From sequence record OP617745.1: a stretch of 64,000 nt of DNA; one strand, 5' to 3'. Every line of letters begins with the position of its first letter. The first letter of the stretch is position 1. The position numbers were made by a program, and so were the translations under genes. This document shows positions 1 through 64,000 of this stretch, piece after piece. Under the pieces are notes generated by a model, which was not told the DNA's origin, searched no databases, and worked only from the letters and a program-made list of their open reading frames with translations.

Positions 1-1
1 A

Positions 2-2265: not shown

Positions 2266-4911
2266 ATGTCATTAATTCAACTTTCACCTAGTAATGGTGA
2301 TTCATTATTAATAAATTCTGGTTCTTTTAGTACTGGTAAAATTATCAGAACACGAAATGAACTTGTATTTTATACAGACCAGTACGGTAACAGTACTGGA
2401 TATCGTTGGTTGGGTAATTTACCTCATACAATTAATGGTAATTCACCACAAACCGATGGTGGTATTTCAAGTACATCATGGGAATCTTACATTACTTCAA
2501 ATTTATATGATAAATTAAAATCAGAAAATATCACATTATCAGGTACAGCACATTTACCAACTGTTGAAGTTGCATATGGATTACCAAAAGGTTCATTGAA
2601 AGTTTGGACTCCTGGTTCTACCAGTTCATCTTCCCAGTACTGGTTATATTCAGATGGAACTGTGTGGGGTGGTGTTGGAGTTTTAGGTAATGAACCGGTA
2701 TCACCGTTCACGCAAATACATTTACAGAGAGATATTATAAAGTATACTTATGTGGTTGTAACTAATGGTACTAACACAGTATATATACCTTATACATTTA
2801 GTTCAGTGGAAGTTTATATAAATGGAGTATTACAAAGTATAGAGGCTGGTAATTTTTCAGTAAATTCTAATTATGTAATTTTTTCAGAAAATCTAGTAAA
2901 AAATGATGTTATTCAATTCTTTTTATCTAATGTTCCTATTAGTAGTTTGGATTATGCAACTAAAATTTTATTAGCGTCAGTTTCTGGTGCATCACTCATA
3001 GGAACAAGTGATGGAAAAACCGTACAAGAAACATTGGATAATTCTCCTAAAATTTTAGGTGATTATGAAGATTCTATTCACACATTAACTACCACAAATG
3101 ACATTATTACATTCAGAAGCGTACAATATAGAATTAGTGATGAGTCATTATTACCTTATACAACATCAGGTACTACTATTTCTACATGGACACAGGATGT
3201 TATTAATTTCAAATCACAAAATAGCGATATTTACATTTCAGTACTGAATTACGGGGCGGTTGGTGATTATAATACATCCACCAACACCGGAACTGACTGT
3301 ACTAATATGTTCAAAGCAGCAATTAAAGATGCAATTTCCAAAGGAATTAAAAAAGTTTATGTACCCGGAGGAAAATATTTAATAACAGGTGAAATCAATT
3401 TAGGTGGCGAAAATTTCATTTCTGGAGAGGGTACCCGTGATTATTGGCGTGGAATTGTCGACGGCGTAAGTTTGGTTGGTGATGGTCCTTATAGTACTAT
3501 ACTAGTTTTCGATCCACCATCTAGTGATACACCGTGTATTTCTGCAAGAGGTGGGTGGGGTACGCATTCACCAAGAGCCGTCTCTCAATTAGCGATTGAG
3601 CCAAAAGTATGGGCTGATTATTCCAGTACTGCATCCGGTACAGGTATATTATTACAAGGTTGCTGTTTTGTTCCTGTGACTGATGTACATATTGGTAGAT
3701 TCAAAAGAGGTATTCATCTATGGAATTTATTACAAGGTGCGAATGACACATCTAATACATTTACACAAGGAGATTTCACTGAATTCAACCGTTTTACCAG
3801 AGTTCGTGTATTCAACAGTGATATAAGCGTTGATTATCAAGTGACAAAAGGAAATAATTCATTTCATGGTAATTCATTTGCTGATTGTATGTTCCAAATC
3901 AATTCATATGGTGGTATTGGTCTACGAATGTGGGATGATGGTACAAGAGCTACAATTGTTCCACCCACTAATGCGTATTATCAATATATTGCAAATGTTT
4001 ATAATAACAATTTTGATATAAACTTTTTTGGTAGCGATGCAAGAGTTTGTTATCTTATGTCGTTGATTCGTGCACAGGGACGTGGCTGTGCGGGTACGAT
4101 GACAGTTGAAGCGGCGGTAACTTTAAAAACTGATACATTTGAATGGTTCCAAAGTTTTGGTAGCTTACATTCAATTTCAGCTATCAATACTTCAGTTGGT
4201 GCCACAGATACAAATACCAGACCAGTCGCTTTTATGTGGAATAATTCAGCATATCCACAACCATATTTTGATGGCTCTGATACATCTGGAACGTTATTAG
4301 CCACATCATATCCAAGACAATTTGATGTTAATAATTATGGTAATACTGGAATGGATTTACTAAATGTTCGTGGTGCACAATCTGGGTCAATTTGGTCACA
4401 GTTGACAAGTAACGTATCAGTTGGGTGGTTGTTTTCAACAAGAACAGTGGATAAATCTCGTGCTGGTCAAAATACAGTTTGGCGTTTTTATTATGATGGT
4501 ACACAAATTAAATCATCAAATACACAGGTTGGATTATACAATAGTACAGTTGGTGTGAATCTCACCAGTACTGCATTAGTTCCTTCTATTAATACGACAA
4601 TAAATTTGGGTTCTGCATCATTGAGATATAATGGGTTATATATTAATGGATGGAATATGGGTACAGGTGGTATAGTTCCAGTTACAGATTCATCTGTTAA
4701 TATAGGCAGTAGTTCATATTTTGTAAACAGAACTTATACAAAAACAACCTATTATACAAGTACGGTGTTTGATTCTGCGGGAACTGGTTCTCCCGAAGGA
4801 ATTGTTTCGGCAGGCGTTGGTAGTACATACAGACGAACCGATGGTTCATCTGGTTCAACATTTTATGTTAAAGAATCCGGTACCGGAAATACTGGCTGGG
4901 TGGCAAAATAA
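2266..4911 (+). CDS. Tailspike / putative polysaccharide depolymerase (881 aa)
   Basis: N-terminal phage anchor-like segment (YRWLGNLPHT...PQTDGG). Pectate-lyase-3-like beta-helix start ISVLNYGAVGD...AAIKDAISKGIKKVYVPGGKY. C-terminal GSPEG..SAGVGSTYRRTDG..GWVAK motif typical of tailspike ends. Confidence 0.8.
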   Translation: MSLIQLSPSNGDSLLINSGSFSTGKIIRTRNELVFYTDQYGNSTGYRWLGNLPHTINGNSPQTDGGISSTSWESYITSNLYDKLKSENITLSGTAHLPTVEVAYGLPKGSLKVWTPGSTSSSSQYWLYSDGTVWGGVGVLGNEPVSPFTQIHLQRDIIKYTYVVVTNGTNTVYIPYTFSSVEVYINGVLQSIEAGNFSVNSNYVIFSENLVKNDVIQFFLSNVPISSLDYATKILLASVSGASLIGTSDGKTVQETLDNSPKILGDYEDSIHTLTTTNDIITFRSVQYRISDESLLPYTTSGTTISTWTQDVINFKSQNSDIYISVLNYGAVGDYNTSTNTGTDCTNMFKAAIKDAISKGIKKVYVPGGKYLITGEINLGGENFISGEGTRDYWRGIVDGVSLVGDGPYSTILVFDPPSSDTPCISARGGWGTHSPRAVSQLAIEPKVWADYSSTASGTGILLQGCCFVPVTDVHIGRFKRGIHLWNLLQGANDTSNTFTQGDFTEFNRFTRVRVFNSDISVDYQVTKGNNSFHGNSFADCMFQINSYGGIGLRMWDDGTRATIVPPTNAYYQYIANVYNNNFDINFFGSDARVCYLMSLIRAQGRGCAGTMTVEAAVTLKTDTFEWFQSFGSLHSISAINTSVGATDTNTRPVAFMWNNSAYPQPYFDGSDTSGTLLATSYPRQFDVNNYGNTGMDLLNVRGAQSGSIWSQLTSNVSVGWLFSTRTVDKSRAGQNTVWRFYYDGTQIKSSNTQVGLYNSTVGVNLTSTALVPSINTTINLGSASLRYNGLYINGWNMGTGGIVPVTDSSVNIGSSSYFVNRTYTKTTYYTSTVFDSAGTGSPEGIVSAGVGSTYRRTDGSSGSTFYVKESGTGNTGWVAK

Positions 4912-4920
4912 GGATAAAAA

Positions 4921-7005
4921 ATGTCATTAACTAACTTAAATTCATCAAACTCAAAAAGTATGTTAATTAATTCTGGTACATTTAGAAGTGGGGTGTACAT
5001 CACCTCACAAAACCAAATTTTAACATATACAGATAGTAATGGGATGACTGCTGGATATTATTACACTGGCTCAGTTCCATATACTACCACCAAAAATACA
5101 CCACAGAGTGATAGTGCACTTTGGAAAGTTATGTTCATTGCAGATAAGTACTCTTATCTAAAATCTGACATTGTACCAATTACCAGTGGTGGTACTGGAG
5201 CTAATAATATATCTAATGCAAGAACTAACTTTGGTTTAGGCACTGCTGATACCCCAACGTTCCAGAGTCTTAATATTCAGTACAGTTCCAATGAACCAAA
5301 AATTAATTTAAATAATTCCATCATTAGATCTAACACCAGTAACGCATTAGTTGTTAGTGCATTACAAGGGATTTATTTACGTCCAGCAGGTGACAATGTT
5401 TCGAGTCCACAAATTTCATATTCTACGGCTGGGGCATTGACAATGACAAACACTAATGTTACAGTTAACGGTAATGTTAGTGTTAACGGTAGTTTAACAT
5501 TAAGTACTGCATTAGCACTTTCAAGTGGTGGTACTGGAGCAACTGATGCACCCACGGCGAGAACAAATTTAGGATTAGGTACATCATCAACTGTTGATAC
5601 TGGTACAAGTGGTGCCACAATTCCATTGCTAAGTACTGCAAATACATGGTCATCTACTCAAACTATACAAGGCAACTTAGTTGTTGGTGTATCAGGTACG
5701 AGTACTATTAATTTGGGTGCTTCTGCTTTTATGCGAGATAATGGATCAAAAGCATTAATTATCACGTCCAACTCAGCATCTGATGCATCCCCTGCTGGTC
5801 TGTATCTACGACCAATGGGTGATACTGTAAGTACAGTGCAAATTTATGGTAATAGTACTGGATGGTCAGTCAATGGTAATACTCAAATTTCTGGAACATT
5901 TTCTAATACAGGAAATGCTTCATTTTTGAATAGTGCTTATACAGTTGATAGTACTGGGATGTACGCATCAAGTACTGGAAAAGTGTTAGGTGCCGTTGGC
6001 ACACCGTGGAGTACTACTTATACTAATACATTAACATCTGGTACATCAGCACAGCTTTATTTAAATTCAACATCTGGTACTATAAATTTACAAAATTCTG
6101 GTGTAACCACATATACATACACATCTAGTGCTTTTAGTCCAGCAACAACAGGTAAAAACTCGGCGGCGGCTGGAACTCCGTGGAGTATAACATATAGCAA
6201 TTCTATTACATCAGGAACCAGTACGGCATTAACTTTAAATGGCACTTCAACTAACATAAATTTACAAATAGCTGGAACTACGATAATACAGCTAGGATCG
6301 TCGGGTTTTGTATCTAATAACAACGTGACATATAGATCGAAAAATACATCAGGTACTGCATTAGATCTATGCAAAATTGATACTAGTAATATTACACAAA
6401 TTGGTAATACTACTATACAAACTAATATAAATTCTTCAGTACATCCAACAGTAAACGTGGCTGGAACTTCTTATACACTTTATAGTACTGGTAATAAACC
6501 AACAGTAAGTGCATTTAGAGCAAGCTATTTAACAACTGCTGGTTCAGATTCCAAACAAACATTAACTGCATCTAATACACCACAGACTTTATTAGTTAAT
6601 ACTATAACTGCTGCATCAAGTATTATAACTGCTAATACAAGTACTGGTACATTTTTATCTAATGTTACACAAGGCATGATGATGTCAATTAACGCACAAA
6701 TTATTAGAGAAACTTCTGGTGGTGGTGATGTTTATTGGATAATGTTCTTGGAAACAAGTACGGATGGTACAACATGGACTTCTGTTCCGGGTTCTAATAG
6801 AATTGTTACATTAAGTTCTAACACAACTAATGAAATGAAGCAGGTTGATTTTACCGTTGCTATACAAAGTACACAAGGTTCATATATAAGAATTAGACAT
6901 GCCTGTACTGATAGTACTAAAACCGTTTCTGTAATTTCTAAAGATTCATTATTTGCCGGTGTTCCAATTTCATCTGGTTTGATAGTAAGTTTCTTAACTA
7001 TATAA
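4921..7005 (+). CDS. Tail fibre protein with internal repeats (694 aa)
   Basis: Ser/Thr/Gly-rich. SGGTGA...ARTN(F/L)GLGT tail-fibre repeats. N-terminus homologous to that of 2266..4911. Confidence 0.8.
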   Translation: MSLTNLNSSNSKSMLINSGTFRSGVYITSQNQILTYTDSNGMTAGYYYTGSVPYTTTKNTPQSDSALWKVMFIADKYSYLKSDIVPITSGGTGANNISNARTNFGLGTADTPTFQSLNIQYSSNEPKINLNNSIIRSNTSNALVVSALQGIYLRPAGDNVSSPQISYSTAGALTMTNTNVTVNGNVSVNGSLTLSTALALSSGGTGATDAPTARTNLGLGTSSTVDTGTSGATIPLLSTANTWSSTQTIQGNLVVGVSGTSTINLGASAFMRDNGSKALIITSNSASDASPAGLYLRPMGDTVSTVQIYGNSTGWSVNGNTQISGTFSNTGNASFLNSAYTVDSTGMYASSTGKVLGAVGTPWSTTYTNTLTSGTSAQLYLNSTSGTINLQNSGVTTYTYTSSAFSPATTGKNSAAAGTPWSITYSNSITSGTSTALTLNGTSTNINLQIAGTTIIQLGSSGFVSNNNVTYRSKNTSGTALDLCKIDTSNITQIGNTTIQTNINSSVHPTVNVAGTSYTLYSTGNKPTVSAFRASYLTTAGSDSKQTLTASNTPQTLLVNTITAASSIITANTSTGTFLSNVTQGMMMSINAQIIRETSGGGDVYWIMFLETSTDGTTWTSVPGSNRIVTLSSNTTNEMKQVDFTVAIQSTQGSYIRIRHACTDSTKTVSVISKDSLFAGVPISSGLIVSFLTI

Positions 7006-7007
7006 TA

Positions 7008-7037
7008 AAAAAGCCGCAATTTATGTTGCGGCTTTTT
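7008..7037 (+). terminator. Intrinsic terminator ending the tail-fibre cluster
   Basis: AAAAAGCCGCAA-TTTATG-TTGCGGCTTTTT. Confidence 0.85.
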
Positions 7038-7087
7038 CTACATTATGATATTATTACATCATTCTAAATCCATTTAAAAATCTTTTA

Positions 7088-7116
7088 TTGACAAAGGATC
7101 TATTTTAAGTTAAAAT
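7088..7116 (+). promoter_or_regulatory. sigma70-type promoter
   Basis: TTGACA-N17-TAAAAT, 30 bp upstream of the 7146 ORF. Confidence 0.8.
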
Positions 7117-7145
7117 GCAAAAATAACTATTTAAGAGACTGAAAA

Positions 7146-7649
7146 ATGGCGAAATTTGATCGACTACAAAAAAAGTATACTTTTGTATTGCATTTACTAA
7201 GAAGAAGTTCAGTACTAAAATCGTTAGTACATGATGATAAATCAAGAAAAGAACTTATTGAATGCATGTATGATATGTCCAGACATACATTATATAAATT
7301 ATTAAAGGATTATAGTACTGATCCGTTTAATTCACGTTTTGAACTAAATTCTTCACCGAATTATACATCATTAGCATCCATTGATAAGTTTGAACTAAGA
7401 GATAAAACTAACAATATTCTTTTATGTATCAGCAACTATAATGGTAGTACCGAAAAATACAATCCAAAGTATATCAAATGTAATGCACATATTAATGGAA
7501 AGTACATAAGTGATGTTTTAACTGAAAATGAAAAATTGTACTTTTTACGTTTACATGAAGATGTGCGTGTAATGATCAAAAACTTTGATGAATTGGAAAA
7601 ATATCAGGAAATCAACGAAGTCAAAGATAAACTAAAAAGGTTATATTAA
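7146..7649 (+). CDS. Hypothetical protein
   Basis: 167-aa ORF with SD-like GAGA; first of a run of overlapping genes. Confidence 0.7.
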   Translation: MAKFDRLQKKYTFVLHLLRRSSVLKSLVHDDKSRKELIECMYDMSRHTLYKLLKDYSTDPFNSRFELNSSPNYTSLASIDKFELRDKTNNILLCISNYNGSTEKYNPKYIKCNAHINGKYISDVLTENEKLYFLRLHEDVRVMIKNFDELEKYQEINEVKDKLKRLY

Positions 7650-8137
7650 TGGCTATTGCACCCAAGAAACCAAAACCAAACGATAACTCAGTAAAATGCA
7701 TGTTAGGTGCATTGTTATTATCCAAAAGTTTAATACTAATGGAGTATAATAACAAAAGAGATATTTTAAATGCAAAGTACTACAATTCAAAAGTCTCACA
7801 AGAGGTATATCATTTCTGTAAGTACTGTGTGAACAATCCATCAGATATAAGTTATTTTAATGAAAGTGGTAATTTAAGATATCAAAATCCTGTTTTTGAA
7901 TTTTATATCGAACATTATGATATGGGGTTCAAATATTCATCACAATCTGATGTTGTGTACTTTAAAGTTCAAAATAATTGGATGGAATTCAGTACTAACA
8001 AATATGACAAAATGTTATTGAGTTCAGTATTTTTTTGTTTATCAGAAAGAGAAAGAAATGAAAAAATTCTTTCCAATATACAAAATACAATAGATAGTAA
8101 ATTGCGTTATCTTGCTATGTATAAGGAGACAAAATGA
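7649..8137 (+). CDS. Hypothetical protein
   Basis: 162-aa ORF; TAATG coupling to the previous gene. Confidence 0.7.
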   Translation: MAIAPKKPKPNDNSVKCMLGALLLSKSLILMEYNNKRDILNAKYYNSKVSQEVYHFCKYCVNNPSDISYFNESGNLRYQNPVFEFYIEHYDMGFKYSSQSDVVYFKVQNNWMEFSTNKYDKMLLSSVFFCLSERERNEKILSNIQNTIDSKLRYLAMYKETK

Positions 8138-8532
8138 CAATTGATGATATTTACAGTACAATAAGGAATTTGGATAAGTACAAAAAAGTTTTTGATTCAA
8201 TCAACCGTAATATTTTTTACGGTATTGGTACGTATGATATTATACAACTGGAATACGATCAGGAAGGGAAAAGTGGTATAAATTTCGTGTGTCCACGTGA
8301 CAGCGAAAACAATTTCATGTATGTTGAAGTGAACGAAGATGGTATCAAATTTACAAAAATCTTCAAAGGTGGAATTGATTACGAAGAACTGGATTTGAAT
8401 GAAGAAGATAGTTTCTTTCAACAAGATACTGTTATAAATCTTGGTTTTTCATTACAAGAGTACAGAGAGATGCATAAAGATTTTATGCGTTATTACAATG
8501 GTTTCCTCAAAGAATTAACGGTACATTTATGA
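8134..8532 (+). CDS. Hypothetical protein
   Basis: 132-aa ORF; ATGA overlap, AAGGAG SD. Confidence 0.7.
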   Translation: MTIDDIYSTIRNLDKYKKVFDSINRNIFYGIGTYDIIQLEYDQEGKSGINFVCPRDSENNFMYVEVNEDGIKFTKIFKGGIDYEELDLNEEDSFFQQDTVINLGFSLQEYREMHKDFMRYYNGFLKELTVHL

Positions 8533-10227: not shown

Positions 10228-10244
10228 TACAAAGAGGTAATTAT

Positions 10245-12114: not shown

Positions 12115-12152
12115 AAATAGACCCTAAATATTCATATATCTTTGAAGGAGAT

Positions 12153-51274: not shown

Positions 51275-51284
51275 GGAATAAGAA

Positions 51285-51890: not shown

Positions 51891-51903
51891 TAAGAGGTAT
51901 ATA

Positions 51904-53016: not shown

Positions 53017-53023
53017 CAAAAAC

Positions 53024-53052
53024 AAAAAAAGGAGCCAATCGGCTCCTTTTTT
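53024..53052. terminator. Bidirectional terminator
   Basis: AAAAAAAGGAGCC-AATC-GGCTCCTTTTTT. Confidence 0.85.
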
Positions 53053-53053
53053 G

Positions 53054-53527: not shown

Positions 53528-53539
53528 AGAAACTCCTTG

Positions 53540-54865: not shown

Positions 54866-54867
54866 TG

Positions 54868-56331: not shown

Positions 56332-56385
56332 TTGAATTCTCCAAATGCATTTTTTATATAGTATTTAGAGAAGATAAAAAAAGAG

Positions 56386-56415
56386 TTGACATTGCAATTT
56401 AATTTCTGATATAAT
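56386..56415 (+). promoter_or_regulatory. sigma70-type promoter for clpA
   Basis: TTGACA-N18-TATAAT with extended TG. Confidence 0.75.
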
Positions 56416-56463
56416 GTAATCATAGTTCAATACAAAAAGAGACATTTTACAAAAGGAAAATCA

Positions 56464-58773
56464 ATGAATCTACAAAAACTATTTAAAGTAAGCGATGATC
56501 TGGCAACTTCTCTTGGTCATACATATCTTACTATTGACCATATTAGTGCTACACTTCTTGAAGTTGATAGTATTGTAGAACTATTCAATACCATGAATAT
56601 TGATACAAATAAACTTCACAGTCGTGTGATGAATTTTCTGAAAAGTACTGAATATCCAAATCAACCGGCTAGTATGTCAGCTAATGGGACTAACAGTAGT
56701 TCTTTGTTGGTAAATCGCGTATTCAATGAACTGTCAAAAAAATCAGTTATTGAACAACTTAAACGTGATGATTTTACAATTGATTCATACTTTGTACTAT
56801 TTGAATGCTTGTCTTTCCCTAATACAGCACTAGAAGCTGCGTTAAAAGAAGAAGGCGTGTCTCGCACTGAAGCAGCACGTGCATTACAAAAACATGTGGC
56901 GAAAATCGATAGTTCCATCAATCTACAAAGTATTGCTGAAGATCCTAATTCATCAGATAAGAAAGCGACGGCGGGACAAATGAATGCAATTAAACAAAAA
57001 ACTCTAGAAGATTTTACTGTAAACCTGACTAAACTTGCACAGGAAGGTAAACTTGACCCAATGATCGGTCGCCAAAAAGAACTTCAATCACTAATTGAAG
57101 TAATGGCACGTAAAAACAAAAAGAATGCTATTCTTACTGGTGATGCAGGAGTCGGTAAAACTCAGATCGTCGATGGTTTTGCACAAGCCATTGCTGATGG
57201 TGACGTACCTGACTATCTGAAAGGTGTTGAGGTATTATCTCTTAACGTTTCTGCTGTAACTGCTGGTACAAAATACCGTGGTGAATTCGAAGAACGTATG
57301 GAAGGTATTATTAAAGAACTTAAAAAACGAGAAAATGTAATTTTGTTCATTGATGAAGTACATATTATGATGGGTGCTGGTGGTAGCAGTACTGGATCTA
57401 TGGATATGAGCAATATCATGAAACCAGCACTTTCACGTGGTGATATTCGTGTTATCGGTGCAACAACTTATGAGGAATATCGCCAGAACATTGAAAAAGA
57501 TGCTGCATTTTCCCGCCGATTCACCAAAATTGATGTAGTTGAACCTAGTATTAACGAAACACGTGAAATTATTAATGGACTGAAAGGTACTTATGAAAAA
57601 TATCACAACGTAACATTCAGTACTGAAACAATTAACTCAATTATTAATCTGAGTTCTAAATTTTTACAAAATAAAAAGTTTCCAGATAAAGCAATTGATC
57701 TGATGGATAGTGCTGCTGCTAAAATTCGTTCAGAAAAACGTTCAGATCTAAAAGTGACGGTACGTGATATTGAAGAAGTTGTGTCCAGAATCACAAACCT
57801 TGATATTAGTGTTATTTCTTGTACTGAAAGTGAACGCATGAATAATCTACCAGATGTTCTACGTTCGCGTGTATTTGGTCAAGATGAAGCAATTGAAAAA
57901 TTGGTCGATAACGTTATGGTTGCACGTGCTGGGCTACGTGATAAATCAAGTGTTCAGGGTGCTTTCATGTTTGTTGGACCATCTGGTACAGGTAAAACTG
58001 AAATCACAAAAGCACTTGCTGAAGCAATGGGTTCTGAGCTAATTCGTTTTGATATGTCAGAGTTTTCACAAGATCACACTGTATCTAAACTTATTGGTTC
58101 ACCTCCTGGATATGTAGGTCATGAAACAGGTAATGGTCAGCTTCTTGATAAAGTTGAACAATTCCCTAATGCAGTACTTCTACTGGATGAAATTGAAAAA
58201 GCACATCCAAAGGTACTACTGACATTCCTACAAGTATTGGATGAAGGGCGTTTGACTGGTTCACAAGGTAAAACAGTTTACTTTAATAATATTACGGTTA
58301 TTATGACTACAAACCTTGGAGCAGCAGATTCCAATAAACGTAGTATCGGTGTAAGTACAGTGGATTCTGCACAAGAAAAAGCTATTAAAGCATTTTTACC
58401 ACCAGAATTCATCAATCGCATTGATAGTATTGTTAAATTCAATGAACTATCATCAGAAGCAATTGATAGTGTAATTGACAAGTTTATGGGGGCATTGCGT
58501 GAACATGTTAAAGAACGTGGAATTGAAGTGGTACTGACCAAGCGTGCACGTGAATACCTAGCAGAGAATGGTGTTCAGAACGGCATGGGTGCTCGTCCAA
58601 TGAAGCGTTTGATTGAGCAATGCATTCGTGTACCTTTGGCAAAAGAAATGCTTCTAGGCTCTCTGGTGAACGGTGGTAAGGTAACGTTTGATGTGATTGA
58701 TGGTAAGATTGCAATTAAACAAAAAGTTAAAAAAGCCACAAAGGAAATTGATTCAGCAGAATTAGAGGCATAA
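56464..58773 (+). CDS. clpA: ClpA-like Hsp100 ATPase (two AAA+ modules)
   Basis: LDPMIGRQ; GDAGVGKT; LFIDEVH; GPSGTGKTE; RFDMSEF...SKLIGSPPGYVG; LLLDEIEKAHP; PPEFINRID; GMGARPM. Confidence 0.92.
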   Translation: MNLQKLFKVSDDLATSLGHTYLTIDHISATLLEVDSIVELFNTMNIDTNKLHSRVMNFLKSTEYPNQPASMSANGTNSSSLLVNRVFNELSKKSVIEQLKRDDFTIDSYFVLFECLSFPNTALEAALKEEGVSRTEAARALQKHVAKIDSSINLQSIAEDPNSSDKKATAGQMNAIKQKTLEDFTVNLTKLAQEGKLDPMIGRQKELQSLIEVMARKNKKNAILTGDAGVGKTQIVDGFAQAIADGDVPDYLKGVEVLSLNVSAVTAGTKYRGEFEERMEGIIKELKKRENVILFIDEVHIMMGAGGSSTGSMDMSNIMKPALSRGDIRVIGATTYEEYRQNIEKDAAFSRRFTKIDVVEPSINETREIINGLKGTYEKYHNVTFSTETINSIINLSSKFLQNKKFPDKAIDLMDSAAAKIRSEKRSDLKVTVRDIEEVVSRITNLDISVISCTESERMNNLPDVLRSRVFGQDEAIEKLVDNVMVARAGLRDKSSVQGAFMFVGPSGTGKTEITKALAEAMGSELIRFDMSEFSQDHTVSKLIGSPPGYVGHETGNGQLLDKVEQFPNAVLLLDEIEKAHPKVLLTFLQVLDEGRLTGSQGKTVYFNNITVIMTTNLGAADSNKRSIGVSTVDSAQEKAIKAFLPPEFINRIDSIVKFNELSSEAIDSVIDKFMGALREHVKERGIEVVLTKRAREYLAENGVQNGMGARPMKRLIEQCIRVPLAKEMLLGSLVNGGKVTFDVIDGKIAIKQKVKKATKEIDSAELEA

Positions 58774-58777
58774 AAAC

Positions 58778-58806
58778 AAAAGGAGAGCTTTTATGCTCTC
58801 CTTTTT
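58778..58806. terminator. Bidirectional terminator
   Basis: AAAAGGAGAGC-TTTTAT-GCTCTCCTTTTT. Confidence 0.85.
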
Positions 58807-58808
58807 TA

Positions 58809-61800
58809 TTATATAACATTTAACAAGTTATTGAGTACCAAACCGTCAATTTTCAATGAATTAGCATACACACTTACATCAATTGGTTTGTAATAATTTT
58901 TATAAACACTAAAATTAAGTTCAACACCAAGATTGATACCAGTGAATGTATATGTTTCACCTTTAGCAAAATAGTGTTCAGCACTATACATATCTGAACG
59001 AAGGATATTGTTATTATTTCGCACATGAACTTTTTCATATCCAAGTACGATAATATCATCATAACTAGTACTACCAGTAATGATATTATCCTTAACACTA
59101 TATGTACCAACTGAAACTGGCTCCACCACATAAGTGGTATTTTCATTCTCAACTTTAGTAACACTGGTTACTGTACAAGTTGTATCACCGATATACACTT
59201 TATCTGTTAAATCATATGAGTAAGTCCATCTTACACCATCGAACACAGGTTTAATATCATCGACGTCATATTCATATACAGTAAACTCTAAACTTTCTGG
59301 AGTTCCAATACGAACCAGTTCATCTAATGTACCAACACCGGTATTTGGCATGAAATATCCACTATCAACCACACCATCAGAAGTTTCAACTAACTCATTA
59401 GAGATTAGCCAAACATCCAAATCTAATGGATCTATTTCATCCGTGTAATCACCATTATTCAAAGAAATATCATAGAATACATCATAGTCCATAACATCAA
59501 CTCTGTAATTTCTTATACTTTCATACAACAAATCACCATTGTTATTGAACTCATGGTCTGCAAAACTTCTAATACGAATAACATTTATACTTGTTTTTGT
59601 ATAAGGTTCACCAGTATTATTAGTGGTTAAATTATTAAACTCAAGTTTATTTCCATTTGAATCAACCAAAGAATAAACTCCGTTATTAAGCTCAACTTCA
59701 AACATAATAGGTCGATCATTCTCTTTGATTTTATCAGTACTGAGAATAAGTTCATGAGTAAAGTTCTGGTATCTGTAATAATCATCACCATCTGGGGTAA
59801 ACACCATAACTTTATCACCACTATTGAGATTACTATTTTTCATCAAGAATTCAGTACTGCTTATAATACTATCAATAGTACTGATATAATTATAAGAGTC
59901 TTTCTTAATTACTGTGCGGTTTACATAGTTTTGTACCAGACTATATGGAGGAATGCTCACAATAGCTTCTGTACGCTTGTATGGATTGAGAACAACAAAA
60001 CCCTCTATCTGGAATCGACTAAAGTCTTTAATCTGCTGTAGAGATGTAGAATCGTTACTATAACCATCTACTGTAAAACGCATTTGTGAAATAGAATTAG
60101 CACTTGGGTTCAACTCGGAAATATCAATGAAAACTGATTCAGTCAAATCACCTTCGTAGCTCAGTGCGACAGTTTTATATTGAGATTCCAAACCTAAATT
60201 ATCATAAGCATTCATATCATTATAATACTTCTGCCCCTTGATTCCCTCAAGTACAACCATGTAGTCACTGTACATTGGATTATTATCATCCATTTCCAGA
60301 TCATCCATATCAATCTCAACTGCTGTAACTACTGAACCATCAGTAATGAAAAGATCTTCCATATATTCATCAATGCTACGATCATCAGGAATACTAACAT
60401 AACTACCGTTAATATTGAATCTAATATATTTTCTCGGGATCATTACAAATGCCTGAATATCCATTGATTTACGATTACTATTCAGAATATCCTCTGCATA
60501 TGCATAAGGATCATCACTGTCTTTATCAAACGTGTTACGAATAGCAGTTAGTACATGAATAGCATCTTTGTAATAACGACCCTGAGAATCAATATCATAT
60601 TTGAAACAATAGATACCGTATTCAATTTCCATTACGCTTCTGATGGTTTCTTCATCAGCATCTGGTGTTTCTTCCAAAATAAGTTCTCTATAATGGGCGA
60701 ATAAATCCTCACTAATTTCAAAATATCCCATGTTAAAGTCAGAACTTGAACTAAAACCAAAAGGCAATCTCGTATTCGGATTATCATTGTAAATTTCACC
60801 ACTCAGACCACAACCAATGGTATCATGGATTACATCTGAACTCATTGAACTATAAAGTTTTAATCTATTACTCAATGTATTATATTGTGAATACATTCTA
60901 ACATCTTGTGTTAAGTTAGAAGTACTATACAATTCAGAAGTGATTCTGTCTAAATCAGAAGTGAAACTTTCAGTTCTTTCAGCATCATCAACGTTCAATT
61001 TATACCATGCATTGATAGCATCAACTAAATCCAGACTTGTATCAAAATCAGAATATAGTTCAAACATATCAACAGAAATCTGAGTATAAATTTCATCTAC
61101 CTCAACAACTGGTAGTGTATACTTGAAACGCTGGATTTCATAGTACTGTACATTATCATCAGAATTACTTACATACTTAGCATTGTTCTCTTCCAGACTT
61201 GTAACATCATATAAATCACTATCAGGCTGGCATTGAACATTATCAAATTGCATTGAGATATCAATTTCCTGGAATTTTCTATCTGGGTAAACGAAGTCGT
61301 TTGGTATTGAACCAACTACCACCCATTGTCCAGTACTTTCATTATATTCAGCATATTCATGATCCCAAATATCAGATTGTGTTTTAACCCAAATTGTACC
61401 GTTATATTCATAACCATTTGGATCTAAATCATTACAAACACCATAAACATAATCAGTGTCGGATGTTTTCTGTTCAATTTGAGAACGAATTTTAGTCCTG
61501 TACGGTTTAACTTCATTGAAATATTCAATAATCTGATTAATCAATTCGTCATTAGTGTAATTTTGTTTAAGTGATTGTTCTAACCCAACAATATAAATGT
61601 ATGAAGTTTTGAATACCCAATCAACCACACCCTGTTCAACGTGTACGTATTTAACCATGTCAAATACAATATTACTTTGAGCTAAATCGAATGTATTTTT
61701 GATTAAATCTAATGCACTTCTTACATTAATTTCCTTGTTGCTTAAAGAACCATCACTGTTATAAACTTCATACCCATCATATAAAGATGAATTAAGAGCG

Positions 61801-64000
61801 ATTGTGCTGTTTTGACGCCCAATAGCATTCCAGAATACAGTATTACGTGATGATGTTTTCACATACATTGTCCATCCATCTGAATCAGTGATTCGAATAA
61901 CATCACCAACTTGATAGTTTTTGGTATTAGCTATATCCAGGCTGGCTTCCTGAGTATAATCAGTATTTTCATCATACCCATCACTATACCAGTCAGCATA
62001 TTCCCAGTACTGGGTCATGTCAAGAGAAGTACCAAGTGATTCAACATAATCACTCTGTTTAATCATACTATGTTGTCCTTCACCTAGACCTTCCAGTGTG
62101 ATTGTTGATGGATTAGCATCAGTACTCTTTGTAGTCATGAATCTTATATAACCATTACTATCGTAGTGGACGAAATATACTGAAGTTGTATCTAGCGGGG
62201 ATGGTAATACACCAGTACTACTCAAAATTACTGCATCGTTTTCATCGAATTTATCAAAATCAGTTGAGACAACAAATTCGTTATTGTATGCCAGAACCCT
62301 GAATGTAACTGAATTTTCATTCACCTCAGTAGTTTTAACCTTGAAAACTTCACTCATTAATACCGTATCAGTTATGATATTTTGTGTTTTGTAATAATTA
62401 TTTGCACTATCTACAAACGTTCTGCGAGCTTCAATCAAATCCATAAACCAGGTTTTAGATGAACCCAACCCTAATTCTACACCAGGATAAACAATTTCAT
62501 TTACTACACCACTCTTCGTGGTTTCGTGTCCTTTCAGAGAATTCCACAGAGAATTCCATATATCTGAATTGAAATTGTAGCTATCTCCTTCTTTACATAG
62601 CTGATATTGTTCATGTTTAATAATATCAACACTATCTTCATGATAAGAAACTGTCAAAATGCTGGTATCATCAGTAATTTCATATTGCATATTACTAAGA
62701 ATGAATGAATTCTCGTTAATTGGTGCAAACCAAGGAACGTCCAGTAAATGTGGATCTTTAATAATACGTGCAATATCAGTACATGATTTACTTCTGGTGT
62801 TAATTGGTGGTACATAAATTGTATCTCTTACCCAGAAATAATAATACGTAACATATGAATCAGTTGTTTCATCATACTCAATGAATGAAGTATAATTATC
62901 CATGATTGCAGTACCAGAAGGTATATACATAGTGTTATTTTTATTATTTTTAGTTTGTTCCTGACAGTATTTGTCCCAATTATATGGCTGTACTGGAGAT
63001 TTAACCCACTCAAGAACATTAATATCACTATGTGGTAGCAATCTACCCCAGTTATAACGACGATATTCATTTGTAGCATCTTCATCAATGTCACCATTCT
63101 CATCCAGTACTGGGCGAGTGTAATCCAAATAAAATGCAGTACTGGTGTCCCACCATACTTGACCAACTTTCTCAGAACCCCATGCTTGAAGAGTTTCTCC
63201 ATTGCTATTGTACTGAGCAGGGTCTACTGGAGAGATATAAGATACATCTTTCATTGCAGTCCCAGGTAAAACACCATTAATTGGGTCAAATATATTAAGA
63301 TATAATTCAGTAATGTTTGTTTTTGAATTATAAGTAGATGGTCTATCAAATAAAGTACTATCTGGAACATCAAAACTGTATTTTTTATCAATATATGCCT
63401 GGCGTTCGGTTGTATCACTGAATCTGGATGTATATTTGTACAGTTTTGGTCTTGTATCTGGATCAGTGAAATTAATTGTGATACTTGTATCAAACGGAAC
63501 AACAATTTTAGTTTTATCATCACCTGCCGTGAAATATTGACTTTCTACTGTTAATGCATCTGGCATAAAATATGTATCATCAACAAAATAATAATAATCA
63601 CCATCATCTAATGGAGCTTCGGCATCTAATTGAACAGTACAGTACTGTTCAGCATAAGTATCAGTATTTTCAATTGGAGTAATTGATAACATAGATACAC
63701 CAGTATCAACTAAATCAAAAATGTTCCATTCCTGATTCATATCAACGAACATCCACACTGAATCTGGATTTTCACCATTATTTTTAATATAATTCATGCG
63801 GTCTTCATATGAATCCTGATAAGTCCATGTAGTATAAGATACTTCATTTAAATTAACTGGGCCAATATCAGGTAAATGGATATTACCACTCTTCCCTGAA
63901 CGCATCGGGAAGCGGAATTTACCTTTAGGACGAGTAATCCATCTGGAATCTTCACCTTGTGAACCATAATAAACTATTTCAGTACTACTTGTACTTGTAT
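58809..64000 (-). CDS. 3' part of a very large virion structural protein (baseplate-wedge-like); gene starts right of the window
   Basis: Frame is open from 63905 to the window edge (>1730 aa); Y..EVKPYRTKIR and W....GSE.VGQVWWD motifs seen in large myovirus baseplate proteins. Confidence 0.7.
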   Translation of the reverse strand, partial: TSTSSTEIVYYGSQGEDSRWITRPKGKFRFPMRSGKSGNIHLPDIGPVNLNEVSYTTWTYQDSYEDRMNYIKNNGENPDSVWMFVDMNQEWNIFDLVDTGVSMLSITPIENTDTYAEQYCTVQLDAEAPLDDGDYYYFVDDTYFMPDALTVESQYFTAGDDKTKIVVPFDTSITINFTDPDTRPKLYKYTSRFSDTTERQAYIDKKYSFDVPDSTLFDRPSTYNSKTNITELYLNIFDPINGVLPGTAMKDVSYISPVDPAQYNSNGETLQAWGSEKVGQVWWDTSTAFYLDYTRPVLDENGDIDEDATNEYRRYNWGRLLPHSDINVLEWVKSPVQPYNWDKYCQEQTKNNKNNTMYIPSGTAIMDNYTSFIEYDETTDSYVTYYYFWVRDTIYVPPINTRSKSCTDIARIIKDPHLLDVPWFAPINENSFILSNMQYEITDDTSILTVSYHEDSVDIIKHEQYQLCKEGDSYNFNSDIWNSLWNSLKGHETTKSGVVNEIVYPGVELGLGSSKTWFMDLIEARRTFVDSANNYYKTQNIITDTVLMSEVFKVKTTEVNENSVTFRVLAYNNEFVVSTDFDKFDENDAVILSSTGVLPSPLDTTSVYFVHYDSNGYIRFMTTKSTDANPSTITLEGLGEGQHSMIKQSDYVESLGTSLDMTQYWEYADWYSDGYDENTDYTQEASLDIANTKNYQVGDVIRITDSDGWTMYVKTSSRNTVFWNAIGRQNSTIALNSSLYDGYEVYNSDGSLSNKEINVRSALDLIKNTFDLAQSNIVFDMVKYVHVEQGVVDWVFKTSYIYIVGLEQSLKQNYTNDELINQIIEYFNEVKPYRTKIRSQIEQKTSDTDYVYGVCNDLDPNGYEYNGTIWVKTQSDIWDHEYAEYNESTGQWVVVGSIPNDFVYPDRKFQEIDISMQFDNVQCQPDSDLYDVTSLEENNAKYVSNSDDNVQYYEIQRFKYTLPVVEVDEIYTQISVDMFELYSDFDTSLDLVDAINAWYKLNVDDAERTESFTSDLDRITSELYSTSNLTQDVRMYSQYNTLSNRLKLYSSMSSDVIHDTIGCGLSGEIYNDNPNTRLPFGFSSSSDFNMGYFEISEDLFAHYRELILEETPDADEETIRSVMEIEYGIYCFKYDIDSQGRYYKDAIHVLTAIRNTFDKDSDDPYAYAEDILNSNRKSMDIQAFVMIPRKYIRFNINGSYVSIPDDRSIDEYMEDLFITDGSVVTAVEIDMDDLEMDDNNPMYSDYMVVLEGIKGQKYYNDMNAYDNLGLESQYKTVALSYEGDLTESVFIDISELNPSANSISQMRFTVDGYSNDSTSLQQIKDFSRFQIEGFVVLNPYKRTEAIVSIPPYSLVQNYVNRTVIKKDSYNYISTIDSIISSTEFLMKNSNLNSGDKVMVFTPDGDDYYRYQNFTHELILSTDKIKENDRPIMFEVELNNGVYSLVDSNGNKLEFNNLTTNNTGEPYTKTSINVIRIRSFADHEFNNNGDLLYESIRNYRVDVMDYDVFYDISLNNGDYTDEIDPLDLDVWLISNELVETSDGVVDSGYFMPNTGVGTLDELVRIGTPESLEFTVYEYDVDDIKPVFDGVRWTYSYDLTDKVYIGDTTCTVTSVTKVENENTTYVVEPVSVGTYSVKDNIITGSTSYDDIIVLGYEKVHVRNNNNILRSDMYSAEHYFAKGETYTFTGINLGVELNFSVYKNYYKPIDVSVYANSLKIDGLVLNNLLNVI

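What the first reader, a model, noticed from the sequence alone, without database searches (positions are those of the whole stretch)
1..64000. The palindrome AGTACT is about 10-fold over-represented across the whole window, independent of reading frame
By eye I counted about 60 AGTACT sites in the first 20 kb and about 17 more in 20-27 kb, roughly one per 330-400 bp; the count is approximate. They stay common in the minus-strand genes out to 64 kb. At ~32% GC, a random 6-mer of this composition is expected about once per 2.9 kb. The site occurs in all three codon phases: AGT-ACT Ser-Thr at 5701, AAG-TAC-TAC at 7776, TCA-GTA-CTA at 7211. It also occurs in intergenic DNA (13919, 14733, 14797) and in both arms of a terminator (26766, 26790). 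Amino-acid or codon bias alone therefore seems unlikely. Phages normally avoid palindromes because of restriction, so strong enrichment suggests a dedicated system. Inferred candidates: (a) a genome-wide binding site for a phage nucleoid/packaging/segregation protein; (b) a modification site used for strand or self/non-self discrimination, as GATC is for Dam/MutH/SeqA; (c) the footprint of biased, Vsr-like sequence-specific repair. The window encodes two Vsr-like nuclease domains, but that link is speculative. I do not know of a description of this.
Basis: partly seen in the sequence, partly recalled or inferred. Interest (0 to 1): 0.85.

Follow-up and report, generated by a model that had tools for sequence, protein, structure and literature searches.

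The report
Highly iterated AGTACT palindrome in jumbo phage
A giant Klebsiella phage and its whole family keep the palindrome AGTACT (best form CAGTACTG) about once every 400 bases, re-creating it even at the cost of amino-acid changes and building it into their early promoters, so some unidentified factor must read this word.

Summary
The window is Klebsiella phage KP13-7 (RaK2-like jumbo phage), record positions 248001-312000. It holds 151 AGTACT sites against 16-22 expected. This is the top hexamer by far.

- **Not a codon effect.** Protein-preserving synonymous shuffles give 46±6 against 144 observed in CDS. All three reading frames and intergenic DNA are enriched.
- **The real unit is an 8-bp two-fold symmetric word, CAGTACTG.** The window has 31 copies against 0.6 expected. 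The GTAC core is indispensable and the outer positions count in a graded way.
- **The trait is family-wide.** It appears in RaK2, 121Q, GAP32, CBB, Serratia BF, fHe-Yen9-04 and XbC2. It is absent from more distant relatives and from a T4-like phage of the same host strain.
- **Sites turn over.** Only 2-9 of about 35 are shared at 58-66% protein identity. They are lost at the tips and retained 2-3 times longer than neutral at deeper divergence. They are re-created independently.
- **The word also has fixed roles outside the window.** Two phased copies sit in the sigma70-type early promoters of the terminal repeat.
- **An unrelated Leclercia prophage carries it too**, at about 14 times expectation, with sharp boundaries against host DNA.

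The Vsr link is not supported. The best reading is the recognition word of an unidentified two-fold symmetric DNA reader, kept dense by weak selection. The closest analogue is cyanobacterial HIP1. I found no description of it.

The parts
1..64000 (.). Field of 151 dispersed AGTACT sites, one per 424 bp. 144 lie inside CDS of all functional classes on both strands and 7 lie between genes.
   Evidence: Expected 16-22. Spacing is Poisson-like. Only 5 of the 151 have a promoter-like AGTACTG-N1-2-ATAAT context.
2391..63647 (.). 31 copies of the full 8-bp optimum CAGTACTG. Starts: 2391, 2635, 3239, 3624, 4566, 8647, 9633, 13582, 18007, 18576, 19997, 22199, 25225, 27673, 28600, 31344, 38969, 40456, 45777, 48327, 49881, 55446, 56193, 57387, 57618, 59735, 59852, 62005, 63105, 63137, 63640.
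   Evidence: 31 observed against 0.59±0.75 in dinucleotide shuffles. Five copies extend to TTCAGTACTGAA, starting at 3237, 22197, 27671, 45775 and 57616.
5701..5706 (+). Example of a phase-0 site, AGT|ACT = Ser-Thr. 90 of the 175 Ser-Thr dipeptides in the window are encoded this way.
   Evidence: Independent codon choice would give 15%.
7211..7216 (+). Example of a site with its first base at codon position 3 (xxA|GTA|CTx). There are 39 such sites.
   Evidence: 13 expected under synonymous shuffling.
7776..7781 (+). Example of a site with its first base at codon position 2 (xAG|TAC|Txx). There are 15 such sites.
   Evidence: 3.2 expected under synonymous shuffling.
13919..13924 (.). Intergenic site in a promoter-like context (TTGAACA...AGTACTATGTAATATAAT), downstream of the gene ending at 13898.
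   Evidence: The promoter reading is by eye only.
14733..14802 (.). Two intergenic sites (14733 and 14797) in the 1-kb stretch that carries no annotated gene in KP13-7.
   Evidence: Small ORFs are annotated in this stretch in Muenster and RaK2.
26756..26803 (+). Intrinsic terminator after the neck-protein gene. Both stem arms contain AGTACT (26766 and 26790).
   Evidence: -17.2 kcal/mol, z=-5.4, followed by a run of U. Close pairs of sites are not over-represented overall (14 gaps below 60 nt against about 20 expected).

Best explanation
AGTACT is the core of a highly iterated, two-fold symmetric 8-bp word with optimum CAGTACTG. The GTAC core is indispensable and the outer positions contribute in a graded way. 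It is most likely the recognition site of an unidentified sequence-specific, dimer-type DNA reader.

The RaK2/121Q/GAP32/CBB family keeps the word at about one copy per 0.35-0.45 kb throughout the genome. This happens through weak selection on density, not on position. Single sites are expendable and turn over. Losses are purged over time, and new sites arise independently in each lineage, often by changing amino acids to Ser-Thr.

The same word sits at two fixed places in the family's sigma70-type early promoters. One copy abuts the -35 hexamer and one abuts the extended -10, two helical turns apart. A bound reader there would control early transcription. The dispersed copies make the whole phage chromosome a target at least 10 times denser than host DNA, which amounts to a self-mark.

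**Shown:** the enrichment, its DNA-level and symmetric nature, family-wide maintenance with turnover, constraint on existing sites, the promoter placement, and the occurrence in a second, unrelated phage lineage.

**Inferred:** that a protein reads the word, which protein it is (host or phage), and what occupancy achieves.
For: **It acts on DNA.**
- The enrichment survives protein-preserving shuffles: 144 against 45.9±5.9.
- All three frames and intergenic DNA are enriched.
- C at -1 and G at +1 are enriched 2-4 fold in every reading frame.

**The recognition looks like a graded weight matrix.** With a GTAC core, O/E rises with 0 to 4 outer matches as 1.14, 1.95, 4.2, 14.3 and 57. Core mismatches abolish the enrichment.

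**It is genome-wide and family-wide.**
- Four other RaK2 regions show O/E 10-13.5.
- AGTACT is the top or second hexamer in every relative with 62-71% sheath identity, at O/E 5-8.
- The 8-mer reaches 16.6 fold in the pooled distant relatives, and XbC2 has 107 sites against 14 expected.

**Positions are not remembered.**
- Only 2-9 of about 35 sites are shared with relatives at 58-66% protein identity.
- Where Ser-Thr is conserved, the relative uses AGTACT 77% of the time if KP13-7 has the site and 76% if not. Ser-Thr itself is conserved in only 19% of cases.

**The pattern fits selection rather than mutation bias.**
- Among five 97-98% identical genomes, 17 sites are missing from one genome and 5 are present in only one. 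Single-step gains number 3 against 2.2 expected, so they occur at the neutral rate.
- In a trio with about 5% divergence per branch, sites take 24 hits against 44.4 expected (P=6e-4), or 8 against 23.7 with an outgroup filter.
- In that trio, gains (21) balance losses (14). The shift from the shallow comparison has Fisher P=0.007.
- Sixteen lineage-specific sites differ from the sister sequences at 2-4 of 6 positions, against 0.8 expected.

**It has a fixed functional placement.**
- Muenster bases 1-16000, inside the terminal repeat, carry 82 sites in 5,970 intergenic bases.
- 19 pairs there are exactly 20 nt apart, and 19 stretches match the dual-site promoter pattern. The consensus is AAAAGTAC|TTGACA ... 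CAGTAC|TG-n-TATAAT.
- The same design recurs in distant family members L117 and L052.

**A second lineage has it.** A roughly 33-kb Leclercia prophage has AGTACT at 73 against 5.1 and CAGTACTG at 31 against 0.36. It shows the same preference for C at -1. Counts drop to background in the host flanks on both sides.

**Controls are flat.** E. coli K-12 has 11 sites in 50 kb. A T4-like phage isolated on the same host strain has 5 against 4.4.
Against: - No reader has been identified. The promoter copies and the dispersed copies might serve different ends.
- Single-step gains from one-off neighbours are not elevated (4 against 8.8; 3 against 2.2). Evidence for positive selection on gains therefore rests on multi-step gains. 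Many of these lie in locally fast-evolving or possibly recombinant stretches.
- A fixation bias such as biased gene conversion would leave the same tip-versus-deep pattern as selection.
- The constraint estimate compares sites with the average column, not with matched codon positions.
- An 8-bp word with no spacer is more typical of restriction or modification enzymes than of helix-turn-helix regulators.
- The argument that the trait does not depend on the host rests on the recorded Xanthomonas host of XbC2. That phage is about 90% identical to metagenomic members of a genus otherwise known from Cronobacter.
Confidence: 0.5

Rival explanations
1. Methylation mark. AGTACT, or its GTAC core in context, is the target of an orphan DNA methyltransferase, as GATC is for Dam or HIP1 for DmtA/DmtC. 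The early promoters would be methylation-sensitive, giving a replication-coupled early shut-off. The dispersed copies would mark phage DNA for a methyl-directed process. This is a special case of the main explanation in which the reader is an enzyme.
For: - A PF05869 Dam-family adenine methyltransferase (RaK2 gp447; KP13-7 record positions 189027-189536) is conserved next to a cytidylyltransferase gene. It is found in Alcyoneusvirus, 121Q-like phages, Munch, XbC2, GAP32, fHe-Yen9 and Erwinia phages.
- RaK2 also has a C5 methyltransferase. Its DNA was reported to resist many restriction enzymes (PMC3622015).
- A contiguous 8-bp palindrome is typical of Type II enzymes.
- In cyanobacteria, iterated palindromes co-occur with cognate methyltransferases, and one-off variants are biased to the outer positions, as seen here (PMC4390886).
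Against: - No methyltransferase was found in the Leclercia prophage by precomputed Pfam or by PHROGs.
- To my knowledge, characterised PF05869 enzymes are GATC-specific or non-specific.
- GGTACC (0 against 31) and CGTACG (3 against 24) are strictly avoided in the family. GTAC is therefore not generically protected.
- The graded, super-multiplicative enrichment fits affinity better than a strict enzyme site.
- C-to-T and G-to-A changes at the sites are not raised (4 against 4.3 expected), so there is no sign of m5C.
Confidence: 0.2
2. Neutral drive. A biased mismatch repair or gene-conversion process, Vsr-like or a methyl-directed ratchet as proposed for HIP1, converts near-matches into the word. 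No function is needed.
For: - A drive acting on heteroduplexes would give the same excess of losses at the tips and balance at depth.
- One-off variants are enriched at the outer positions, as in Elhai's ratchet model (PMC4390886).
- Alcyoneusvirus carries one gene that the Muenster annotators call Vsr-like.
Against: - That gene is absent next to the sheath gene in all other AGTACT-rich genera, and the second candidate occurs only in KP13-7. Neither resembles E. coli Vsr by BLASTP or Pfam.
- No neighbour is depleted. AGTATT/AATACT has O/E 0.9-1.4.
- Single-step gains occur at or below the neutral rate.
- A drive does not explain the fixed positions in early promoters.
- It also does not explain the identical word in an integrated prophage that spends most of its time replicated by the host.
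Confidence: 0.12
3. Processing site. The word is cut, nicked or used as an attenuation signal by a nuclease, helicase-nuclease or topoisomerase. It would act like Chi, a nick site or a start point for recombination-dependent replication. High density would protect or activate phage DNA, most of all at the end that enters first.
For: - CA|GTAC|TG has the geometry of a 4-bp staggered cut.
- The highest density (O/E 30) lies in the terminal repeat.
- Phage DNA carries at least 10 times more sites than host DNA.
Against: - The excess in the terminal repeat is largely explained by the promoter copies.
- The RaK2 paper mentions no topoisomerase.
- There is no direct evidence of cleavage.
- E. coli Chi itself is not informative here (3 against 0.5).
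Confidence: 0.1
4. RNA-level signal. AGUACU would act in the transcripts, for example as a nuclease, chaperone or pairing site.
For: Almost all phage DNA is transcribed. A palindrome is present in both sense and antisense RNA. Two copies form a terminator stem at 26766/26790.
Against: - The flank preferences are symmetric (C at -1, G at +1, weak T/A further out) in all frames. This is expected for duplex DNA and not for a single-stranded RNA signal.
- Close pairs of sites are not in excess.
- The promoter copies lie upstream of the transcription start.
Confidence: 0.04
5. By-product of codon, dipeptide or tRNA usage. AGT and ACT are preferred codons and the phage has its own tRNA-Ser(GCU).
For: - AGT makes up 34% of Ser codons and ACT 45% of Thr codons. 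62% of the CDS sites are AGT|ACT.
- RaK2 encodes tRNA-Ser(GCU).
Against: - Synonymous shuffles give 46 against 144 observed.
- The other two phases are 3-4.7 fold enriched, and intergenic DNA about 5.6 fold.
- Ser-Thr dipeptides are themselves in excess (175 against 112) and poorly conserved. The DNA word is driving the protein sequence, not the reverse.
Confidence: 0.02

Closest known systems
HIP1 (GCGATCGC) and alternate highly iterated palindromes of cyanobacteria
   Same: - A nested 8-bp palindrome at roughly one copy per 0.3-1 kb.
- Present in coding DNA in all frames and between genes.
- Maintained across a whole clade.
- One-off variants are biased to the outer positions.
- Function still debated (PMC4390886; bioRxiv 10.64898/2026.06.24.733823).
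   Different: - Here the carriers are phages, not cells, and the hosts' own DNA lacks the enrichment.
- The word is AT-rich.
- No cognate methyltransferase has been shown.
- Spacing is Poisson-like, not quasi-periodic.
- The word is also a fixed element of early promoters.
GATC with Dam, SeqA and MutH in Enterobacteria, including Dam-sensitive promoters
   Same: A short palindrome read genome-wide. It also sits in some promoters, where its state controls transcription. A Dam-family methyltransferase is conserved in the phage family.
   Different: To my knowledge, GATC is not notably over-represented genome-wide. Methylation of AGTACT is untested.
Chi sites and DNA uptake sequences (DUS/USS)
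   Same: Over-represented short words that mark 'self' DNA for a DNA-processing machine. They are kept by selection or drive on density, with positional turnover.
   Different: Those words are asymmetric and orientation-dependent, and they belong to cellular genomes. This word is a palindrome, so orientation cannot be tested. No machine is known.
Footprint of very-short-patch (Vsr/Dcm) repair on E. coli k-mers
   Same: It is a known way in which sequence-specific repair skews oligonucleotide frequencies.
   Different: To my knowledge, that footprint is modest over-representation of CCWGG with strong depletion of the T-containing neighbour CTAG. Here the enrichment is 7-57 fold, no neighbour is depleted, and no family-wide Vsr gene was seen.
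SlmA-binding sites (GTGAGTACTCAC) of E. coli nucleoid occlusion
   Same: The central hexamer is AGTACT, read by a dimeric TetR-type protein (PMC3020112).
   Different: - SlmA needs G1, T2 and a purine at position 3.
- The phage sites prefer C at position 3 and disfavour G at positions 1 and 3.
- Their flanks match the SlmA box less well than chance, and the window has only one exact box, at 44632.

Membership tests
Highly iterated palindrome (HIP-type genome feature) | A palindromic oligomer far more frequent than composition predicts, and alone among palindromes in being so | tested here: met
   AGTACT occurs 151 times against 16-22 expected, and CAGTACTG 31 times against 0.6. Other 6-bp palindromes are at or below expectation.
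Highly iterated palindrome (HIP-type genome feature) | Dispersed through coding DNA in all frames and through non-coding DNA, and not part of a longer repeat | tested here: met
Highly iterated palindrome (HIP-type genome feature) | Maintained across a clade beyond what shared ancestry of individual sites would give | tested here: met
Highly iterated palindrome (HIP-type genome feature) | A cognate DNA methyltransferase that recognises the word or its core | not testable with these tools
   Methyltransferases are present in the jumbo family, but their specificity is unknown. None was detected in the Leclercia prophage.
Vsr / very-short-patch repair footprint | A Vsr-family endonuclease present wherever the skew is present | tested here: not met
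   The gene at 26817-28820 has no counterpart next to the sheath gene outside Alcyoneusvirus. The gene at 35057-36172 is found only in KP13-7. BLASTP against E. coli Vsr gives E=19 and 0.48. Pfam shows DUF7487 for the first and no significant hit for the second. Other parts of the relatives' genomes were not searched.
Vsr / very-short-patch repair footprint | Depletion of the T:G-derived neighbour of the favoured word | tested here: not met
   AGTATT/AATACT has O/E 0.9-1.4. No neighbour falls below 0.6.
Vsr / very-short-patch repair footprint | Mutational input biased towards the word | tested here: not met
   Single-step gains number 3 against 2.2 and 4 against 8.8 expected. At the tips, 17 sites are missing from one genome and 5 are present in only one.
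SlmA-binding site (SBS) | GT-R flanks, giving GTRAGYRCTYAC | tested here: not met
   The flanks are further from the SBS than chance, and there is one exact match in 64 kb. G at -1 is 0.45 times background.
Restriction-site avoidance | Palindrome under-represented relative to composition | tested here: not met
   AGTACT shows the opposite sign. Avoidance does hold for many other palindromes in the same genomes, for example CTTAAG at 0 against 15, and GGTACC at 0 against 31 in relatives.
Sigma70-type early promoter element | Fixed position relative to the -35 and -10 hexamers, upstream of early genes | tested here: met
   This holds outside the window. There are 19+12 pairs at exactly 20 nt in Muenster and RaK2, with consensus AAAAGTACTTGACA..CAGTACTGTATAAT, and the design recurs in L117 and L052. 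In the window only 5 of 151 sites have a -10-like neighbour. Promoter activity itself was not tested.

The most novel reading that the evidence does not exclude
CAGTACTG is a phage 'self' word read by a so far unknown DNA-recognition system. That system is shared by unrelated phages of enterobacteria: the RaK2-like jumbo phages and a small temperate Leclercia phage. It would gate the immediate-early promoters and also coat, mark or protect the whole phage chromosome, which carries 10 to more than 50 times more sites per kb than host DNA. This would be a phage counterpart of Chi, DUS or HIP1.
Probability: 0.25. Interest if true: 0.9.

Novelty: new variant of a known kind. Interest (0 to 1): 0.8.

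Why it matters
Phage genomes are the textbook case of palindrome avoidance, and these genomes do avoid most palindromes. One palindrome kept at 7-57 times expectation is therefore striking. It holds across a whole family of 350-kb phages, is strong enough to reshape protein sequences, and is hard-wired into early promoters. This implies an unrecognised sequence-reading step in jumbo-phage biology, such as early-gene control, marking of phage DNA, or protection.

It is directly testable with cheap assays:
- ScaI/RsaI digests
- a methylome
- oligo pull-downs
- promoter reporters

It also gives a simple sequence signature for recognising these phages and their early regions in metagenomes. Its presence in an unrelated prophage with sharp boundaries offers a small, tractable model. 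It may also shed light on the long-unsolved HIP1 problem.

Tried and rejected
- **Codon, dipeptide or tRNA explanation.** Rejected by synonymous and codon-order shuffles and by phase analysis.
- **Longer repeat or mobile element.** Rejected, since nothing is conserved beyond ±3.
- **Hairpin role.** Close pairs of sites are not in excess in the window.
- **Site 'deserts' in recently acquired genes.** Zero or low counts in thyA, the gp15 homologue and the first tail-fibre gene are within Poisson expectation.
- **SlmA titration.** The flanks do not fit.
- **Vsr-type repair.** See the membership test.
- **Host factor acting on every phage of the host.** A T4-like phage isolated on the same strain is not enriched.
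- **Search for a nuclease or DNA-binding gene in the window.** Pfam on nearly all 76 proteins found nothing family-wide and sequence-specific. A TnsA-like hit was never pinned down and may be the one unscanned candidate, the gp4-type head-completion gene at 36162-36608.
- **Shared gene between the Leclercia prophage and the jumbo phages.** The 445-aa and 221-aa proteins of the prophage's left arm hit T4-like phages and a promiscuous HNH homing-endonuclease family. PHROGs gave no methyltransferase or regulator.
- **wHTH candidate.** The early-region wHTH protein Muenster_011 is confined to Alcyoneusvirus and 121Q-like phages, so it is at best a partial candidate.
- **Literature.** No paper combines AGTACT, bacteriophage and palindrome. 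The RaK2, CBB, Sharanji and jumbo-phage review papers do not mention the word.


Full report
**Identity of the window.** The window is identical to Klebsiella phage KP13-7 (OP617745.1), positions 248001-312000. KP13-7 is a RaK2-like jumbo myovirus of the genus Alcyoneusvirus, 357.7 kb long, with 33% G+C in the window. The window holds tail-fibre, lysis, nucleotide-metabolism, neck, sheath, baseplate and other mostly late genes, 94% coding.

There are 151 AGTACT sites. Expectation is 21.7 from composition, 16.1 from dinucleotides, and 16.4±4.5 (maximum 28) in shuffles. AGTACT is the top hexamer (z=33.6). The runners-up are overlapping words such as GTACTG and CAGTAC. The best unrelated words are ordinary codon pairs with z≤12. 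Most other 6-bp palindromes are at or below expectation, and about two dozen are absent. The terminator with the word in both arms is real.

**The order-4 Markov result.** An order-4 Markov model gives O/E of 1.15. That model conditions on AGTAC and GTACT, which carry the signal themselves. What the result does show is that the flanks of GTAC contribute almost independently.

**It is not a coding artefact.**
- In CDS the sites fall in all three phases, 90/15/39. Seven more lie in 3.7 kb of intergenic DNA.
- Shuffling synonymous codons within each gene, with proteins and codon usage kept, gives 45.9±5.9 (maximum 65) against 144. Each phase is 3-4.7 fold over.
- Of 175 Ser-Thr dipeptides, 90 are AGT-ACT, where 15% would be expected. 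Ser-Thr itself is in excess at 175 against 112.

**Anatomy of the word.**
- Pooling 139 kb of Alcyoneusvirus DNA, the unit is an 8-bp palindrome. CAGTACTG occurs 73 times against 1.3 expected. In the window it occurs 31 times against 0.6.
- With a GTAC core, enrichment rises with the number of outer matches as 1.14, 1.95, 4.2, 14.3 and 57 fold.
- Single mismatches in the core abolish enrichment (about 1-2 fold). Mismatches at the outer positions leave 5-28 fold.
- C at -1 and G at +1 are enriched 2-4 fold in each reading frame, measured against codon-position-specific backgrounds. G at -1 and C at +1 are depleted. There is a weak T/A preference at ±2 and ±3, and nothing beyond.
- The symmetry in every frame argues for recognition of duplex DNA by a two-fold symmetric reader.
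- The steeper-than-multiplicative rise looks like selection on occupancy rather than independent mutational biases. That last step is inference.
- Sites are Poisson-spaced and occur in nearly all genes.

**Distribution among phages.**
- Four other RaK2 regions are even richer, at O/E 10-13.5.
- Every roughly 350-kb relative with 62-71% sheath identity has AGTACT as its top or second hexamer, at O/E 5-8. These include 121Q, GAP32, CBB, Serratia BF, fHe-Yen9-04 and XbC2.
- More distant relatives mostly do not. Vibrio phage 2.275.O has 7 against 11.3. One 20-kb contig, L022, is an exception.
- A T4-like phage isolated on the same K. pneumoniae strain has 5 against 4.4.
- E. coli K-12 has 11 sites in 50 kb and no CAGTACTG.
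- The trait therefore belongs to particular phage lineages. It is not a property of the host genome or of every phage of the host.
- XbC2 is recorded on Xanthomonas. Since it is about 90% identical to metagenomic members of a genus otherwise known from Cronobacter, I do not lean on it as proof that the trait is independent of the host.

**How it is maintained.**
- Against eleven relatives at 58-66% protein identity, each genome has 30-43 sites in the same 16 kb, but only 2-9 are at the same place.
- Where Ser-Thr is conserved, the relative uses AGTACT 77% of the time if KP13-7 does and 76% if it does not (odds ratio 1.06). Ser-Thr is conserved in only 19% of cases.
- So there is no positional memory. 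The pressure acts independently and continuously in each lineage, and it creates Ser-Thr.
- Among five 97-98% identical Alcyoneusvirus genomes (40 kb, 897 singleton substitutions), 99 ancestral sites took 21 hits against 12.5 expected. Single-step gains were 3 against 2.2. By presence or absence, 17 sites are missing from one genome and 5 are present in only one. Raw mutation is therefore not biased towards the word.
- In a trio with about 5% divergence per branch (L008, L029, XbC2) and two outgroups, 47 ancestral sites took 24 hits against 44.4 expected (P=6e-4). With an outgroup filter the figures are 8 against 23.7 (P=2e-4).
- Twenty sites are shared by all five genomes in that comparison. 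Lineage-specific sites (21) balance losses (14). The shift from the shallow comparison has Fisher P=0.007.
- Sixteen of the lineage-specific sites differ from the sister sequences at 2-4 of 6 positions, against 0.8 expected. Many involve amino-acid changes, such as GAC ACT to AGT ACT.
- This is the pattern of weak purifying selection on each site plus directional retention of new ones. A fixation bias would behave in the same way.
- Caveats: many multi-step gains lie in locally fast-evolving or possibly recombinant stretches, and single-step gains are not elevated.

**The Vsr idea.**
- The 667-aa protein at 26817-28820 is called Vsr-like by the Muenster annotators (HHpred against 1CW0). Here it shows only four DUF7487 repeats, no PDB hit by sequence, and BLASTP E=19 against E. 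coli Vsr.
- It is found next to the sheath gene only in Alcyoneusvirus. All other AGTACT-rich genera lack it there.
- The gene at 35057-36172 occurs only in KP13-7 and has at most a faint Vsr/DUF559-like motif (E=0.48).
- No one-off neighbour is depleted.
- The link is not supported. Both genes look like mobile endonuclease insertions.

**The word in early promoters (outside the window).**
- A scan of IMG/VR for two CAGTACTG copies within 5-35 nt pointed to RaK2 positions 226990-238059. That stretch has 72 sites in 11 kb, O/E 30.
- It lies inside the 20-kb terminal repeat of Muenster, a run of tiny early genes.
- In Muenster 1-16000, 82 of the 124 sites lie in the 5,970 intergenic bases (13.7 per kb). 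The coding DNA there has 3.7 per kb.
- The intergenic sites sit in sigma70-type promoters as two phased copies. The design is AAAAGTAC|TTGACA, a spacer, then tCAGTAC|TG-n-TATAAT.
- The last T of the upstream copy is the first base of the -35 hexamer. The last T of the downstream copy plus the following G form the TG of an extended -10.
- The two copies are exactly 20 nt apart in 19 Muenster and 12 RaK2 cases. Contigs of distant family members have the same design at 20-21 nt.
- The window has none of these dual promoters, and only 5 of its 151 sites have a -10-like neighbour. Its copies are of the dispersed kind.
- Two sites on one face of the helix overlapping both RNA-polymerase contact elements are what an operator pair, or a modification-sensitive promoter, would look like. 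That reading is inference.

**A second, unrelated carrier.**
- The same scan found a family of roughly 33-kb contigs with 42% G+C. They encode a lambda-type terminase, portal, capsid, tape measure, a J-like tail tip and a large serine integrase.
- The element is an integrated prophage in Leclercia tamurae and a Leclercia MAG.
- It has AGTACT at 73 against 5.1 and 78 against 5.4 in two overlapping stretches. CAGTACTG is at 31 against 0.36 and 25 against 0.30. C is the base at -1 in 55% of sites.
- Counts fall to 3 in 7.2 kb and 0 in 3.6 kb in the host DNA on either side, where G+C jumps.
- No methyltransferase or recognisable regulator was found in its accessory arms.
- The identical extended word in two unrelated phage lineages of enterobacteria points to a common reader.

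- A Dam-family methyltransferase is conserved next to a cytidylyltransferase gene across the jumbo family. Its specificity is unknown, and the prophage appears to lack one.
- A wHTH protein encoded among the early promoters (Muenster_011) is confined to Alcyoneusvirus and 121Q-like phages.
- SlmA, whose box has AGTACT at its centre, does not fit the flanks (PMC3020112).
- None of these is established.

**Comparison with known systems.**
- The closest known phenomenon is HIP1 of cyanobacteria. It too is a nested 8-bp palindrome, present in all frames, maintained across a clade, with outer-position variants and a disputed function (PMC4390886).
- Chi, uptake sequences and GATC/Dam are looser analogues.
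- I found no paper describing AGTACT enrichment in these or other phages. The RaK2, CBB and Sharanji papers do not mention it.

**Verdict.** The finding is real, strong and apparently undescribed. The mechanism is open. My best account is the recognition word of an unidentified two-fold symmetric DNA reader, kept dense by weak selection and used at the early promoters (confidence 0.5). Methylation marking (0.2), a neutral repair or conversion drive (0.12) and a processing site (0.1) are the main rivals.

Noticed in passing
window 3430, 4879, 21683, 22787, 29966, 31271, 33288, 38609, 41942, 42078, 47687, 49446, 51747, 55093; relatives L005-L031, L041: GGTACC (the KpnI/Acc65I site) occurs 14 times in this Klebsiella phage window, and 23 times against 10.6 expected in 139 kb of Alcyoneusvirus. 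It is completely absent (0 against 31) from 328 kb of the other AGTACT-rich genera. CGTACG occurs 3 times against 24. The non-palindromic GGTACG and CGTACC are normal. This looks like lineage-specific restriction avoidance, relieved in Alcyoneusvirus.
   Followed up: partly
window, whole: There is strong avoidance of many 6-bp palindromes. CTTAAG is at 0 against 15 expected. AGCGCT, AGGCCT, CTGCAG, GAGCTC, CTCGAG, GCATGC, TGGCCA, TGCGCA, CCTAGG and TCCGGA are all at 0. CpG-containing 4-mers (ACGT, CGCG, CCGG, TCGA) are not avoided. This fits the CpG methylation reported for RaK2.
   Followed up: no
window 45904-47457: The thymidylate synthase gene is annotated as one 517-aa ORF. It carries an in-frame insert of roughly 215 aa between the two halves of the enzyme. 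RaK2 and Muenster have an uninterrupted 309-aa gene. RCIP0023 has the gene split around an 'intron-associated endonuclease'. This looks like a mobile insertion (intron, intein or endonuclease) that differs between near-identical phages.
   Followed up: partly
window 35057-36172: This 371-aa gene is present only in KP13-7, inserted between the baseplate-wedge and head-completion genes. It has weak zinc-ribbon hits and a faint Vsr/DUF559-like motif. It is probably a free-standing homing endonuclease.
   Followed up: partly
window 26817-28820: This 667-aa protein has four DUF7487 repeats. It sits between the neck and dNMP-kinase genes in Alcyoneusvirus only. RaK2 has a similar 'Hef-like' gene elsewhere (ORF134).
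   Followed up: partly
window 44632-44643: GTAAGTACTTAC is an exact match to the E. coli SlmA-box consensus GTRAGYRCTYAC. It is the only one in the window.
   Followed up: no
KP13-7 record positions 189027-189536 (outside the window); L040 5981-6499: The Dam-family methyltransferase of KP13-7, Muenster and phiKp_21 is only 69% identical to that of RaK2, K64-1 and RCIP0023. The genomes are otherwise 97-98% identical. This looks like an allele replacement.
   Followed up: no
L021 (IMG/VR contig, 46% sheath identity) and L042 (Vibrio phage 2.275.O): These relatives are not AGTACT-rich but show a modest excess of GGTACC: 15 against 3.9, and 10 against 3.3. This could be an alternate word with the same GTAC core, or only a Gly-Thr codon-pair effect.
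   Followed up: no
window 13899-14924: This 1-kb stretch has no annotated gene in KP13-7. It contains a G-run and A-rich repeats. Small ORFs are annotated on both strands in Muenster and RaK2.
   Followed up: no
L164 15315-17105 and flanks: The Leclercia prophage uses a large serine recombinase and lies next to a short PHP-domain ORF, which may be its disrupted target. It has no recognisable repressor or replication module.
   Followed up: no
window 14925-15374: This is a DUF5856 protein. It is annotated as a Dps-like 'starvation-inducible DNA-binding protein' in XbC2 and by HHpred in Muenster. It is conserved upstream of the thymidine kinase gene in the family.
   Followed up: no
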